51,029 bases of DNA from Octopus bimaculoides (GCF_001194135.2 NC_069008.1:101754-152782); one strand, 5' to 3'. Numbered from the stretch's first letter, positions 33,028 through 38,757 are shown. The notes: generated by a model not told the origin, from the letters alone. Numbers and translations: made by a program.

Positions 33028-33120
33028 TCAGCTGGATGCAGCCCAGATAATCAAAGACAGTAACACCACTATGGCCAATACCACCAACAGAATTACACAC
33101 ATGTTCCTCCGGGAGCGTTT
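33028..33120 (-). CDS. STX7/STX12: Distal alternative last exon of the syntaxin-7/12 gene (TM anchor B)
   Basis: Acceptor cttttgttttgtacatttcag|AAA, phase 0. It encodes KRSRRNMCVILLVVLAIVVLLSLIIWAASS*, which resembles the vertebrate STX12 tail (KKSRKKMCILVLVL...LIIW). The spliced isoform would be 283 aa. Confidence 0.8.
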   Translation of the reverse strand, partial: KRSRRNMCVILLVVLAIVVLLSLIIWAASS

Positions 33121-33160
33121 CTGAAATGTACAAAACAAAAGTGAAAGTAAACAGCAGTCA

Positions 33161-33210
<50 letters not shown>

Positions 33211-34170
33211 TATCTTTTACTTCTTTCAGTAAATATATATTTTATCTTTTACTTCTTTCAGACTGTGGCCATGCTGGGGCACCGCCTTGAAGAATTTATA
33301 GTCAAATGTATCGACCCCAGTTCCTATCACAGTTTATTATTTAATTTTGCATCCGTTCCTCCATGGTGTTGTTTTGCATTTATAAATAAAACAAATAAAT
33401 ACAAATTATAAAAATAATTAAAAAAATATGCAGTACTCTTTCTACTTTGTGGATTTTCACCTATCGCAAGGGGCGGAGGGGTTTTGAAACGTAACACTCG
33501 CGATAATCCTTTCCACAACTGGATGCCCTTCCTAATGCCAACCACTCCAGAGTGTACTGGATACTTTTTAAGTGACACCAGCTTAGTGCATTTTATATGA
33601 TGTACTGGGTTTTTTTCATGTGGCACTGTCACCAGTGCTTTTCATGTGGCACCAGCATTCACAATAACACTTTATGTGGCACTTTGGTTTTAGGATCTCG
33701 ATTCTGTTGTGGTGGGCAGGTCTTCTTGAGTACAGCATTGCACCACATATCCTCATCCCTTTCGTAAGGTTCACTGTTTTAAGATCATCCTTCAATACTT
33801 CATCCCATATTTTCCTGGGTCATATTAAGATGATCCTGGAGAAAGTCAAAGACCTGATGAAAGAAATGTGCCAGAAAGCCCCGTATTTTGGCACTGAGCT
33901 GACACCCCAACTTAAAGTCATGTAAATACCAACCAAGATTAAAAGATTTCAATTGCTTTGAAGCTGACCTTGTGGATATGGAAACCAATAGAAAATTCCA
34001 GAAACAAGGTGGCTGGTGTTAAGAAGGGCCTCCAGCCATAGAAACCCGGCCGAAACACACAGTGAAACATGGAGCAGCCTTCTGCCGAGTCAACTCTTGT
34101 CAACTCATCCAAAGCATGCCAGTATGGGAAACGGATGCCAAATGATGATGAAAATAACCATTGCTACATC

Positions 34171-34587
34171 AACCTGTTTAAGCATTCAGATTCCTCTGTC
34201 AAATGCTTATTAATTCACATGGTTTTGAATTAATCATGCACTATCTCATACCATCAAGATTTTCATGATGTGGTAGTTTATTTTCAGAATGGCATTGCAG
34301 ATAAGTGTGAGAGGCAAGATCTAGCTAGTTTGAACATGGAACATTCTAGAGAGATCTGACCAGTTTAACCCATTTACGATTCAGATTCCTCAAAAATCAT
34401 TGTTATTTATTTGCAGCGATTTGAATTAATCCTGGATTATCTCATAGCTTTGGGATTTCAATGTTGTGACTTTACTTTTAGAACGCCACTGTAGGGTAGG
34501 CGTGAGAAGCTGGATCTGGCCAGTTTGAACATAAAGCAAGTAAAAGATTTTGGCTGGATATGGCCGGATTAAATGCTAAATGATTAA
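34171..34587 (+). mobile_element. Two tandem ~200-bp copies of a MITE-like repeat (TTAA-bounded, piggyBac-like ends)
   Basis: Copies 34171-34364 and 34365-34587 share attcagattcct...ttgaattaatc...gtgtgagag...gatct.gc.agtttgaacat. The second copy runs TTAAccc...aatgctaaatgaTTAA. Confidence 0.5.
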
Positions 34588-34712
34588 GCTGATAACTGAT
34601 ATTAGAACATTTATATGTTCTAAAAATAATACTATTCTGTATTTTTGAGATATGAAATTCTGTATATTATTCACAATGGACAGATAGGTGTCCTTATCTT
34701 GTTTGTTGTTAT

Positions 34713-34757
34713 CACAACGTTTCAGCTGGTGTACTCTCCAGCCTTCATCAGGTGTCC
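34713..34757 (-). ncRNA. Minimal type I hammerhead ribozyme motif (sense to the syntaxin pre-mRNA)
   Basis: CAC-CUGAUGA-A-GGCUGG-agaguaca-CCAGCU-GAA-ACGU-U-GUG: conserved core, helix II, palindromic ACGU helix III, GUU cleavage triplet and a 3-bp helix I. Confidence 0.6.
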
Positions 34758-35058
34758 TGATGGAATTTCGAACCCAACCCTTTATTTCACTGATGTGATA
34801 CTCTGTTCTCATTCCTAAGGTATGTTGCTGATGTTACTTTTCAAGTCCCTGCCTAGGATTGAACTTAGAACCCAAGGGTTAGTAGCCAGCACTATATGCT
34901 TTTATTTGCCAATGTTATTTTTTGTTGATATTTCCCCAAGTCCTGGCTTAAGATTGAACTCGGACAAAAAAAAAACACCAGTAAAAAACAAAATATCTTA
35001 GGAATGAGAACAGAATACCTCATTAGTCAACTAAAGGTCTGGGTCCAAAATTCCCCCA

Positions 35059-35455: not shown

Positions 35456-35723
35456 TAAGAAGCTTGCTTCCCAACCACACAATTCCAGGTTCAATCCCAA
35501 TGCGTGGTATCTTGAGCAAATGTCTTCTACTATAGCCCTGGGCCTACCAGAGCCTTGTGAGTGAATTTGGTGGATAGAAACTGAAAGAAGCCCATCAGTT
35601 TCCATCTACCAAATCCACTCACATGACTCTGGTCTTCCCGAGGCTATAGTAGAAGACACTAGCCCAAGGTGCCAGGTAGTGGGACTGAACTTGGAACCAT
35701 GTGGTTGGGAAGCAAGCTTCTTT
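35456..35723. mobile_element. Tail-to-tail inverted pair of SINE family C copies
   Basis: aagaagcttgcttcccaaccac...tgtcttctactatagcc...aaactg | aaagaagcccat | cagttt...ggctatagtagaagaca...gtggttgggaagcaagcttctt. Single copies at ~27860-27980(+), 43420-43570(-) and 46830-46985(+). Confidence 0.85.
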
Positions 35724-36551
35724 ATTTCATTACATTTGCCATAAAAGCATAATACAGATGGAAGCTTGCGGGCTGGACACCGATATAATGATGATGATGA
35801 TGGAATGAAAAACGAGATGGTGGGTGGGGGAAGTAGACAATGCCCACCGATTGTTACTTCCCGATAACATTGTTCTTTTTTTAAAAAACACAAACAAGGT
35901 ATTGAACCTTTGGCAACAGTTACAAATTGAGGCGCTGAGCCTCTTACCAAAATCACCAAATTCAAATTGAAGNNNNNNNNNNNNNNNNNNNNNNNNNNNN
36001 NNNNNNNNNNNNNNNNNNNNNNNNNNNNNNNNNNNNNNNNNNNNNNNNNNNNNNNNNNNNNNNNNNNNNNNNNNNNNNNNNNNNNNNNNNNNNNNNNNNN
36101 NNNNNNNNNNNNNNNNNNNNNNNNNNNNNNNNNNNNNNNNNNNNNNNNNNNNNNNNNNNNNNNNNNNNNNNNNNNNNNNNNNNNNNNNNNNNNNNNNNNN
36201 NNNNNNNNNNNNNNNNNNNNNNNNNNNNNNNNNNNNNNNNNNNNNNNNNNNNNNNNNNNNNNNNNNNNNNNNNNNNNNNNNNNNNNNNNNNNNNNNNNNN
36301 NNNNNNNNNNNNNNNNNNNNNNNNNNNNNNNNNNNNNNNNNNNNNNNNNNNNNNNNNNNNNNNNNNNNNNNNNNNNNNNNNNNNNNNNNNNNNNNNNNNN
36401 NNNNNNNNNNNNNNNNNNNNNNNNNNNNNNNNNNNNNNNNNNNNNNNNNNNNNNNNNNNNNNNNNNNNNNNNNNNNNNNNNNNNNNNNNNNNNNNNNNNN
36501 NNNNNNNNNNNNNNNNNNNNNNNNNNNNNNNNNNNNNNNNNNNNNNNNNNN

Positions 36552-36660
36552 CCTTAACCAACTGTTCCACGACCCTACTCTGGTCCTGGGAACAGTTCTT
36601 TTTAATGTGGCCTGGTTCCAGGCACAGATGACACTTGGTAGGGGGGGGGGCGTCCCTCAA
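36552..36660 (-). pseudogene. CCHC zinc-knuckle fragment, probably a retroelement gag/ORF1 remnant
   Basis: CHLCLEPGHIKKNC = CX2CX4HX4C at 36633-36592. There is an in-frame TGA just upstream (36666-36664), and the frame runs into gap 35973-36551. Confidence 0.5.
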
Positions 36661-36860
36661 GTATCACTAGATGGAAAACAAAATAATACAGAACAAAACA
36701 AAAAAAAATATGAAAAGTTAGAAGATCAGGGTGTGGCAATATGTGAGAGAGAGAGAAAGGGAAAATGAAGGGGAGAGAGGAGAAAGTTGAGAAAGGATGA
36801 GGACAAACGATTAAGAGGAAAGGAATGAAGGAACAAAGAAGATGGAGATGACACTGAAAG

Positions 36861-36906
<46 letters not shown>

Positions 36907-37144
36907 AGAGTTGAGAGAAAGAGAGGGAGAGAAGAATAAAAACAAATCATTGAGAAAGAGGAGAAAGAGAAATGAAAGAAAATCTGGTTTGCATGGAAAA
37001 TCTCTGAAAATAATTAAAAATAAATAATAACGAAGAACAGAAAAGAAAAATTGAAATAAAATGCAAATAAAAATACATAAACGATAATGAAAGGCAAAAA
37101 AAAATATGAAGAAATAAAATAGTGATTTGGGAGGGTTAAAATAC

Positions 37145-38757
37145 CTAATTGCTGGACGTTGTTCCATAATAAATGGCCAAAATAACACCAATGAGAACAA
37201 TAACAACAACTAAAGTCACAAGAAGACAACATTTTTTCTTTCGAACTTTGGTCTGTGGAAAAAAAATAGAAAAACAACAAAAAAAGAAGAAAATTTAGTG
37301 AATAACTTGCGTGGTGCATGCTGGGAAATAGCAATAAAATGACATNNNNNNNNNNNNNNNNNNNNNNNNNNNNNNNNNNNNNNNNNNNNNNNNNNNNNNN
37401 NNNNNNNNNNNNNNNNNNNNNNNNNNNNNNNNNNNNNNNNNNNNNNNNNNNNNNNNNNNNNNNNNNNNNNNNNNNNNNNNNNNNNNNNNNNNNNNNNNNN
37501 NNNNNNNNNNNNNNNNNNNNNNNNNNNNNNNNNNNNNNNNNNNNNNNNNNNNNNNNNNNNNNNNNNNNNNNNNNNNNNNNTATATATATATATATATATA
37601 TGAGGGGGTACCCCAAAGTAACCAGAAATGTTCTCTGTGGGATAAGCCCATTGTAATTTGGGTTTCCACAGCTAGAAGTCACTTGATGCAACCCTCAGGC
37701 ATCAGTCTGTTGACCGGCATGTCTTTGTTTTGCAGTGCTTCTCCCCTGTTCATCGATTTTTGTGATGGCTGAAACAATGGAAAGCAGGATTGCATTAGAT
37801 TCAGTTTTTTGTTGGGTGAAACAATGACCAAAACAGCTGTCATGCTTCTAACAGCTTACAAGGAAGCTGCCATGAGCAAAACACAAGTTTACAATTGGTT
37901 TTTTTTTTTTGTTGTTGTTTTCCATTCCACTTTAGGAATGGTCACTTGAAGACCAACCTTGTTCAAAGCAACGATTGTCGACCTCCTTAACAAATGAAAA
38001 CATCATAAAAATGCATGAACTGATCTTGGAGAGCCATCATCAAATAATTAACGAACTTGTTGATGTGACTGATGTATCATGGAGCTCTTGCTAACAAATT
38101 TTGAGTGAAGAATTTCGAATGAAAAGAGTTCCAGTAAAATTTGTGCCTCACTTGATCGCAGAAGATCAAAAGCAGTCAGGACTGAATGGAAGAGTTGGAC
38201 GTTTGTCTGGACCTTTTTTGCGAAGGTCATCATTGGTGATAAAAGCTGGTAGTACGGAATTTGCAGACGTGGAAGAGGTGAAGAGAAAAACAACGGAGGT
38301 GTTAAGAGGCATCAGTTTGCAAGAGTTCCAGCACTGCTTCGAACAGTGGAGAACGGGTCTGGACTGATGCATTGCTTCAAATGGAGAATACTTTGAAGAC
38401 GATAAAATCAAAAACATTTTAAAAATAAGTGAATAAAATAATATTGCAAAATTCTGGTTTCTTTTGGGGGATCCTCTCTCATATACACACTGGTTAACCT
38501 GTGCTAGCATGGAAAACTGGACATAAAACAAACATGCATGTATCTGTTATCTTTTACTTGTTTCAGTCATTAGACTGTGGCCATGCTGGGGCACCACTTT
38601 CAATTTTTAAACAAATCAATTGACGCCAGTACCTATTTTTTAAGCCTGGTACTTAATCAGTCTCTTTATGATCAACCACTAAGCTACAGGGACGTAAACA
38701 CACCAACACCAGTTGTCAAGTGATGGTGGGAGACACATACATAGATGTATGTACGTA

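What the first reader, a model, noticed from the sequence alone, without database searches (positions are those of the whole stretch)
33028..37252. Syntaxin-7/12 gene has two alternative last exons encoding different transmembrane anchors
Seen: exon 9 ends in phase 0 (..KEYQ|gt at 39811). Two separate phase-0 acceptors follow. 37252-37145 gives TKVRKKKCCLLVTLVVVIVLIGVILAIYYGTTSSN* and 33120-33028 gives KRSRRNMCVILLVVLAIVVLLSLIIWAASS*. Each has a basic juxtamembrane patch, a hydrophobic helix of about 20 residues and a stop. The 579-nt gap between them is too small to hide a second gene. Established: Qa-SNARE TM segments and juxtamembrane cysteine palmitoylation influence sorting, and C-terminal splice variants are known for syntaxins 1/2/3. 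Inference: one gene makes two differently anchored endosomal SNAREs (di-Cys versus single Cys) by duplication of the last exon. The distal exon looks closer to vertebrate STX12. I am not aware of this switch being described for the STX7/12 family in molluscs.
Basis: partly seen in the sequence, partly recalled or inferred. Interest (0 to 1): 0.72.

Follow-up and report, generated by a model that had tools for sequence, protein, structure and literature searches.

The report
Octopus syntaxin-7 swaps its membrane anchor
The octopus syntaxin-7 gene does make two proteins that differ only in their membrane anchor, but both forms are already in the public annotation. The switch most likely works by including or skipping one small exon that ends in a stop codon, not by choosing between two last exons.

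Summary
On the minus strand, exon 9 of a syntaxin-7/12 gene ends in phase 0 at 39811. Two phase-0 exons follow, A (37252-37145) and B (33120-33028). Each encodes a basic patch, a hydrophobic helix of about 22 residues and a stop.

The window is Octopus bimaculoides. The two predicted proteins are letter-for-letter RefSeq "syntaxin-7 isoform X1" (XP_014776156.1) and "isoform X2" (XP_014776158.1), so the finding is already annotated. Matching isoform pairs are annotated in oysters and Biomphalaria snails. O. sinensis has both forms and Argonauta the B form.

The N gap (35973-36551) is intronic. The gapless O. vulgaris orthologue has the same exon order and only repeats between A and B.

The interpretation needs one correction. 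RNA contigs from a squid or cuttlefish relative show E9|B and E9|A|B, and they differ only by a 99-nt cassette that ends exactly in TAG. An octopod RNA contig also runs from A into B. In this window A ends TAG|gtattt.

So A is most likely a stop-terminated cassette exon and B the single last exon. A cockroach transcript has the same layout.

The B tail matches vertebrate STX7-like and STX12 equally. Seven literature searches found no paper describing this switch. Functional consequences remain inferred.

The parts
47211..47283 (-). Exon 1 (start codon; MASYGQLGNDRGYSSYQSGGQSYS plus 1 nt)
   Evidence: Predicted. Confirmed because the assembled 288- and 283-aa proteins match the RefSeq proteins exactly.
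46445..46519 (-). Exon 2
   Evidence: ag/gt boundaries and reading frame. Exact protein match.
45792..45861 (-). Exon 3
44498..44597 (-). Exon 4
43616..43759 (-). Exon 5
42468..42517 (-). Exon 6
41818..41908 (-). Exon 7 (start of the SNARE region)
41356..41428 (-). Exon 8 (SNARE motif, with the zero-layer Q in VHEQGE)
39811..39893 (-). Exon 9, the last shared exon. It ends in phase 0 (..KEYQ|gtgagt).
37145..37252 (-). Exon A: 108 nt with a phase-0 acceptor. It encodes TKVRKKKCC...YYGTTSSN and ends exactly in the stop TAG, followed by gtattt. Inferred to be a cassette (penultimate) exon.
   Evidence: Sequence. It forms the isoform X1 tail. The O. vulgaris copy keeps the frame, the stop and TAG|gt. 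Relatives' transcripts show E9|A|B.
33121..37144 (-). The A-B intron. It includes the assembly gap 35973-36551, a weak zinc-knuckle fragment running into the gap (36660-36552), and two inverted-repeat pairs.
33028..33120 (-). Coding part of exon B: phase-0 acceptor, KRSRRNMC...LIIWAASS, stop TGA. It is the last exon. It is translated only when A is skipped and is 3'UTR when A is included. The 3'UTR continues below 33028 and its end was not determined.
   Evidence: Sequence. It forms the isoform X2 tail. It is 100% identical in protein to O. vulgaris, with only two synonymous changes.

Best explanation
This is the Octopus bimaculoides syntaxin-7/12 gene, an endosomal Qa-SNARE. It has nine shared coding exons and two tail exons. 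Exon A is a 108-nt cassette that encodes its own juxtamembrane patch and transmembrane helix, and it ends exactly in a stop codon that also forms the exonic half of its splice donor (TAG|gt). Exon B is the single last exon.

When A is included (E9-A-B), translation stops at the end of A. The protein then carries anchor A (di-Cys, YY, polar luminal tail), and B is 3'UTR. Because the stop sits on the last exon junction, junction-dependent mRNA decay should not be triggered. When A is skipped (E9-B), the protein carries anchor B (single Cys, 30 aa, Trp near the luminal end).

The Habc domain and the SNARE motif are identical in both forms. The switch therefore changes only anchor-dependent properties. 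The likely ones are S-acylation, sorting between endosomal membranes and membrane-insertion or fusion behaviour.

Shown: the exons, frames and stops; identity to the annotated isoforms; conservation; and the cassette layout in transcripts of related cephalopods and a cockroach. Inferred: that A is spliced to B in O. bimaculoides itself, and every functional consequence.
For: - The exon structure and both tails can be read directly.
- There are exact matches to RefSeq isoforms X1 and X2.
- Pfam finds Syntaxin_2 and SNARE in both isoforms.
- The gapless O. vulgaris locus has E9, A, B in the same order. Acceptors, frames, stops and TAG|gtattt are all conserved. B shows 2 synonymous and 0 non-synonymous changes. 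A shows 5 and 5, with the frame and stop kept.
- Decapodiform RNA contigs from one run series give five with E9|B and five with E9|A|B. Their 762-nt upstream CDS and 5'UTR are identical, and the only structural difference is a 99-nt cassette ending in TAG.
- An octopod RNA contig, L003, runs from A into B.
- Oysters and Biomphalaria snails have annotated isoform pairs that share the same upstream sequence and carry A-type and B-type tails.
- The oyster genome has A, with its stop at the donor, upstream of B.
- Mis-fused gene models in Nucella and Mactra run from A into B.
- A cockroach transcript shows a first tail, a stop, then a second tail in frame.
- Mammalian STX7 is palmitoylated on the juxtamembrane Cys239, and losing that residue shifts its localisation (PMC8047069, which cites He and Linder).
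Against: - No O. bimaculoides RNA was available, so the A-B junction in this species is inferred from the TAG|gt donor and from relatives.
- The donor TAG|GTATTT is weak, with no G at +5.
- In octopod contig L003, 23 nt of unknown origin lie between A's stop and B. They were not found in the window or in O. vulgaris, so the exact donor or acceptor used in octopods is not fully settled.
- Some A-type mRNAs could still end at a poly(A) site inside the A-B intron. An ATTAAA lies 538 nt after A.
- For octopods, the E9|B junction rests on gene models (RefSeq, O. vulgaris, Argonauta). I could not inspect transcripts for it.
- No localisation or acylation data exist for either isoform.
Confidence: 0.85

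Rival explanations
1. One reading: A and B are true alternative last exons. Each would have its own 3'UTR and poly(A) site, chosen by competition between splicing and polyadenylation.
For: Both exons end in a stop, and both acceptors are phase 0. An ATTAAA lies 538 nt downstream of A, and AATAAA or ATTAAA also follow B. RefSeq lists two accessions for isoform X1, which could mean two mRNA forms.
Against: All five decapodiform A-type contigs and the octopod contig continue from A into B. The stop of A is followed directly by gt in both octopus genomes and sits at the donor in oyster. The cockroach transcript has the same tandem layout.
Confidence: 0.1
2. The second tail belongs to another gene copy or is an assembly artefact. 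On this view a collapsed tandem duplicate or a misjoined scaffold is hidden by the N gaps.
For: The window has 16 gaps, including one between A and B and one 94 nt upstream of A. Gap lengths are only estimates.
Against: The gapless O. vulgaris assembly has the same E9-A-B order and no other syntaxin exon in the interval. Transcripts with either tail share an identical upstream CDS and UTRs. The same pair is annotated in several molluscs.
Confidence: 0.02
3. Only one tail is functional. The other would be splicing noise, or a decay-inducing 'poison' exon.
For: A carries a premature stop relative to B. A evolves faster than B between octopus species (5 non-synonymous changes against 0).
Against: A-type tails (S/T-K-A/V-R-R/K-K-K-C..., a hydrophobic helix, then a polar end) are conserved across molluscs, annelids and nemerteans, and B-type tails are as well. 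A's stop lies on the last junction, so the junction rule for decay is not met. The A form is the commoner assembled form in the decapodiform: its two A-type protein variants sit on 34 and 16 contigs, against 5 for the B form.
Confidence: 0.03

Closest known systems
RefSeq/UniProt records for this gene: syntaxin-7 isoform X1 (XP_014776156.1, XP_014776157.1; A0A0L8H1W2) and isoform X2 (XP_014776158.1; A0A0L8H1Q9), Octopus bimaculoides
   Same: They are identical, residue for residue, to the two proteins predicted from the window.
   Different: Nothing differs at the protein level. The records are automatic predictions with no functional description, and I could not inspect their mRNA structures.
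Annotated syntaxin-7/12 isoform pairs in other molluscs: Crassostrea virginica X1/X2, C. gigas (Magallana) X2/X4, Biomphalaria X1/X2, O. sinensis X2/X3. Argonauta hians contributes the B form only (X2).
   Same: The upstream sequence is shared, with an A-type (SKARRKKC...) or a B-type (KKSRRK...LIIW/Y) tail. The oyster genome has the same A-then-B order.
   Different: Oysters also carry a duplicated exon 9, which octopus lacks. The B tails of oysters have no juxtamembrane cysteine.
C-terminal splice variants of plasma-membrane syntaxins (vertebrate STX2 and STX3; C. elegans unc-64). This rests on my own knowledge and was not tested here.
   Same: The principle is the same: alternative 3' exons replace the transmembrane anchor of a Qa-SNARE and leave the N-terminal domain unchanged.
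   Different: They belong to a different Qa subfamily (exocytic rather than endosomal). In STX3B part of the SNARE motif also changes. Some variants lack an anchor altogether (soluble Stx3S; bioRxiv 10.1101/162958).
SLMAP alternative tail anchors TA1 and TA2 (PMC2712456)
   Same: A tail-anchored protein whose alternatively spliced anchors differ in hydrophobic profile and direct different targeting.
   Different: It is an unrelated protein and not a SNARE.
The vertebrate paralogues STX7 and STX12/13
   Same: They belong to the same family. Their tails have the B form, with W at position 26 in a tail of 30-33 aa. STX7 is S-acylated on the juxtamembrane Cys.
   Different: Vertebrates have two genes. 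No A-type tail appeared among the vertebrate hits I read.

Membership tests
Syntaxin-7/12 (endosomal Qa-SNARE) | N-terminal Habc-type syntaxin domain | tested here: met
   PF14523 Syntaxin_2 matches residues 35-162 with E about 1e-37 in both isoforms.
Syntaxin-7/12 (endosomal Qa-SNARE) | SNARE motif with a glutamine at the zero layer | tested here: met
   PF05739 SNARE matches residues 225-274 with E about 1e-13. The VHEQGE motif is conserved in all homologues read.
Syntaxin-7/12 (endosomal Qa-SNARE) | A single C-terminal transmembrane anchor preceded by a basic patch | tested here: met
   Both tails qualify. The best 19-residue Kyte-Doolittle windows score 3.44 (A) and 3.54 (B), each preceded by K/R-rich patches.
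Syntaxin-7/12 (endosomal Qa-SNARE) | Closest relatives are syntaxin-7/12 proteins | tested here: met
   Among the 120 best hits listed (977 in all at E <= 1e-10), those that carry a family name are syntaxin-7 or syntaxin-12. Exact match to syntaxin-7 X1/X2.
Syntaxin-7/12 (endosomal Qa-SNARE) | Endosomal localisation and pairing with Vti1b, Stx8 and VAMP7/8-type partners | not testable with these tools
   This needs cell biology.
Alternative last exons (each with its own poly(A) site) | The proximal exon ends the mRNA and is never spliced to the distal exon | tested here: not met
   In relatives, A is spliced to B. In the window, A's stop is followed by gt. It could not be tested on O. bimaculoides RNA.
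Stop-containing cassette exon that switches the C-terminus | Inclusion and skipping forms that differ only by the cassette | tested here: met
   In decapodiform contigs, L004 and L009 differ only by a 99-nt insert ending in TAG.
Stop-containing cassette exon that switches the C-terminus | The cassette is flanked by a usable acceptor and donor in this genome | tested here: met
   A polypyrimidine tract plus cag lies upstream. TAG|gtattt lies downstream and is conserved in O. vulgaris. The donor is weak.
Stop-containing cassette exon that switches the C-terminus | Junction reads E9-A, A-B and E9-B in O. bimaculoides | not testable with these tools
   No O. bimaculoides transcript contigs were retrievable.

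The most novel reading that the evidence does not exclude
The stop-terminated cassette exon followed by a second anchor exon may be an ancient device of the syntaxin-7/12 gene, at least as old as the protostomes and apparently never described in a paper. Invertebrates would use it to obtain two differently anchored endosomal Qa-SNAREs from one gene, possibly covering part of the division of labour that vertebrates split between STX7 and STX12.

For: the layout is seen in cephalopods, an oyster genome and a cockroach transcript. A- and B-type tails are recognisable in molluscs, annelids and nemerteans. Amphioxus has two alternative tails on identical upstream sequence.

Against: the insect and amphioxus tails cannot be assigned to A or B with confidence, so independent duplications are possible. 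There are no functional data.
Probability: 0.4. Interest if true: 0.5.

Novelty: already known. Interest (0 to 1): 0.28.

Why it matters
As submitted, the finding adds nothing to the public annotation. Both isoforms of this gene are already in RefSeq and UniProt. What this check adds is the likely architecture. A cassette exon ends exactly in its stop codon, so one splice choice swaps the whole membrane anchor, leaves the SNARE machinery untouched and should avoid junction-dependent mRNA decay. The layout and the two tail types also recur well outside cephalopods. If the two anchors sort or acylate differently, this would be a clean natural experiment on how a SNARE's transmembrane segment sets its endosomal address. 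That remains to be tested.

Tried and rejected
1. A hidden alternative exon 9 in the gap. Differences in exon 9 between two Logan proteins (P0003 and P0005) suggested a two-exon module. I rejected this. P0129 has the same exon 9 as the A form, and tblastn finds only one exon 9 in the window and in gapless O. vulgaris. Oysters do have a second exon 9.

2. Intron-flank conservation as a sign of regulated splicing. O. bimaculoides and O. vulgaris are too close for this test. Most flanks are 55-92% identical (a few lower), with no contrast between constitutive and alternative exons.

3. Classifying tails by fixed-register identity. It separates A from B in most lophotrochozoan tails (Littorina, Mytilus, Argopecten and Lineus were misassigned) and is noisy elsewhere, because hydrophobic composition dominates. 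I relied instead on tail length and the aromatic residue at position 26.

4. The origin of the 23 nt between A and B in octopod contig L003. There was no match with up to 3 mismatches in the window or in O. vulgaris.

5. Amphioxus genomic architecture. Four look-ups returned nothing.

6. O. bimaculoides transcript contigs. None are on record.

7. A second homologue search aimed at octopod B-type transcripts. It returned only short proteins, none from an octopod. It did supply fish STX7-like tails.

8. Literature. Seven searches (with follow-up reading in 22, 23, 55) found no description of a transmembrane-domain splice switch in STX7/12.

9. Pfam on neighbouring ORFs. The only hit was a weak, sub-threshold zinc knuckle.
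Full report
**What is in the sequence**

Read on the minus strand, exon 9 of a syntaxin gene ends ...AAA GAA TAC CAG|gtgagt at 39811, in phase 0. Two exons follow, and each starts in phase 0 behind a pyrimidine-rich tract and an AG.
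- Exon A (37252-37145) encodes TKVRKKKCCLLVTLVVVIVLIGVILAIYYGTTSSN*.
- Exon B (33120-33028) encodes KRSRRNMCVILLVVLAIVVLLSLIIWAASS*.

I rebuilt the whole coding region. Exon 1 is 47283-47211 and exons 2-9 run from 46519 to 39811, all with ag/gt boundaries and consistent phases. Joining A gives 288 aa and joining B gives 283 aa. Pfam finds Syntaxin_2 and SNARE domains in both. Each tail has a K/R patch followed by about 22 strongly hydrophobic residues.

**Identity**

An exact-sequence look-up shows that the 288-aa protein is XP_014776156.1/XP_014776157.1, 'syntaxin-7 isoform X1 [Octopus bimaculoides]'. The 283-aa protein is XP_014776158.1, 'isoform X2'. The locus returned for X1 (GCA_001194135.2, CM046628.1) is identical to the reverse complement of the window, gaps included.

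**The gaps**

The window has 16 runs of N. The flagged one, 35973-36551, lies inside the A-B intron. Two others (37346-37580 and 39196-39205) lie in the E9-A intron. No reading frame has to cross any of them.

That argument is unsound, because gap lengths are only estimates. The O. vulgaris orthologue (L002, OX597841.1) settles the matter, since it has no N at all. There, exon 9 ends at 31450, A is 35116-35223 and B is 42435-42527. A tblastn search with the full protein finds no further syntaxin exon between them.

The A-B interval is 7.2 kb there, against 4.0 kb here. Much of the excess is an expanded CT-rich repeat. The stretch that corresponds to the gap holds only simple repeats and SINE-like copies. 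In the window, the sequence running into the gap carries a short CCHC zinc-knuckle-like ORF (36660-36552). Its Pfam match is weak and below threshold. This suggests the gap sits in a retroelement insertion.

**Conservation**

- Between the two octopus genomes, B is identical in protein, with two synonymous changes. A has five synonymous and five conservative non-synonymous changes, with its frame and stop kept.
- Both acceptors, and the TAG|gtattt after A, are conserved.
- O. sinensis has both tails annotated. It also has a 306-aa form that simply reads through the exon 9 donor. Argonauta has the B form.
- Beyond cephalopods, RefSeq pairs share one upstream sequence and carry an A-type or a B-type tail in Crassostrea virginica, C. 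gigas and Biomphalaria.
- A-type tails (S/T-K-A/V-R-R/K-K-K-C..., a helix, then a polar end; 31-36 aa) and B-type tails (usually K-S-R-R-K...; 30 aa, with W or Y at position 26) are both recognisable in molluscs, annelids and nemerteans.

**How the switch is built**

Logan RNA contigs from one run series of a decapodiform cephalopod encode both isoforms.
- Five contigs have E9|B.
- Five contigs have E9|A followed directly by B (...GGA ACA AAT TAG|AAA CGT GCA CGG...).
- The 762-nt upstream CDS and the 5'UTR are identical. The only structural difference is a 99-nt insert that ends exactly in TAG.

An octopod RNA contig (L003, 95% protein identity to this gene) also runs from A's stop into exon B. 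In the window A is 108 nt, ends in TAG and is followed by gt.

In the oyster genome A lies upstream of B, with its stop at a GT donor. Mis-fused gene models in Nucella and Mactra run from A into B. A cockroach transcript reads ...IIVWQVSN* and continues in frame with a second basic patch and helix, AHTGRRKKKALML...LIIWIKI*.

The best reading is that A is a cassette exon carrying its own stop at its last three bases, and B is the single last exon. Including A gives anchor A and turns B into 3'UTR. Skipping A gives anchor B. Because the stop lies on the last exon junction, the usual junction-distance trigger for nonsense-mediated decay is not met. That last point is inference from established rules and was not tested in cephalopods.

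**What it probably does**

The Habc domain and the SNARE motif are the same in both forms, so partner choice should not change. Three things differ:
- the juxtamembrane cysteines (CC in A, one C in B);
- the interfacial aromatics (YY in A, W in B);
- the luminal end (GTTSSN in A, AASS in B).

Mammalian STX7 is S-acylated on its juxtamembrane Cys239, and the Cys-to-Ala mutant is retained at the plasma membrane (PMC8047069, citing He and Linder). Alternatively spliced tail anchors direct different targeting in SLMAP (PMC2712456). I therefore infer that the switch tunes acylation and sorting between endosomal membranes. No data here test that.

**The other claims**

The statement that the distal exon looks closer to STX12 is only half right. 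Fish and lamprey STX12, and also fish STX7-like proteins, share the B form: an aromatic residue at position 26 in a tail of 30-33 aa. B is therefore simply the vertebrate-like tail. Duplication of a tail exon is plausible, given the same phase, the same layout and an in-frame arrangement, but it is not provable from about 30 residues.

**Novelty**

Swapping the anchor of a syntaxin by alternative 3' exons is a known kind of event; STX2, STX3 and unc-64 are examples from my own knowledge. These particular isoforms are already annotated. Seven literature searches found no paper describing the switch for syntaxin 7/12. The terminal-stop cassette layout and its spread across phyla may therefore be undescribed, but that is a modest addition.

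**Limits**

- No O. bimaculoides RNA could be retrieved.
- For octopods the E9|B junction rests on gene models.
- In L003, 23 nt of unknown origin sit between A and B.
- The A donor is weak.
- The amphioxus loci could not be fetched.

Noticed in passing
L014 (Crassostrea virginica) 13067-13150 and 13367-13450: The oyster gene has two tandem copies of exon 9, the C-terminal half of the SNARE motif, each flanked by ag/gt. C. gigas isoforms use the second type. They look like mutually exclusive exons. Octopus has only one exon 9.
   Followed up: partly
L015 (Periplaneta americana RNA contig), about 760-960: After the stop of the annotated tail (...IIVWQVSN*) a second juxtamembrane patch and helix follow in frame (AHTGRRKKKALML...LIIWIKI*). 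This is the same cassette-plus-last-exon layout as in cephalopods. Whether it reflects homology or convergence is unresolved.
   Followed up: partly
L003 1018-1040 (octopod RNA contig, SRR3401912): A 23-nt stretch, TTCTGACCAATAACATCAATTAG, lies between exon A's stop and exon B. It is not found in the window or in O. vulgaris with up to 3 mismatches. It ends in the same CAATTAG as exon A. It could be a micro-exon, a shifted splice site or an assembly artefact.
   Followed up: partly
window 36552-36660 (minus strand), abutting the gap 35973-36551: A short ORF with a CCHC zinc-knuckle pattern (CHLCLEPGHIKKNC) runs into the gap. Its Pfam zf-CCHC match has E = 0.0011 and is below the cut-off. It is absent at the matching place in O. 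vulgaris. It is probably a retroelement insertion that caused the gap.
   Followed up: partly
window 35457-35584 / 35595-35722 and 34720-34827 / 34989-35096: Two inverted-repeat pairs lie in the A-B intron (128 nt at 82% and 108 nt at 84% complementarity). They are built from SINE-like copies that also occur many times in the O. vulgaris locus. They could fold into long hairpins in the pre-mRNA. Any effect on splicing or RNA editing was not examined.
   Followed up: no
window 39810-39805 (minus strand); P0125 of O. sinensis: O. sinensis 'isoform X1' (306 aa) is a read-through of the exon 9 donor into the intron. In this window the same read-through stops after two codons (VS*). That form would therefore be an anchorless protein here, if it is made at all.
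   Followed up: partly
window 20875-23694 (minus strand): A long open frame, interrupted by a gap, encodes a low-complexity protein rich in Q, S, N and G. It has no Pfam match. It is probably a large exon of the neighbouring gene downstream of the syntaxin.
   Followed up: partly
window about 2000-5500: Long runs of a degenerate repeat on the minus strand translate as (F/Y)VRS(F/Y)V.... This satellite-like sequence is broken by several gaps.
   Followed up: no
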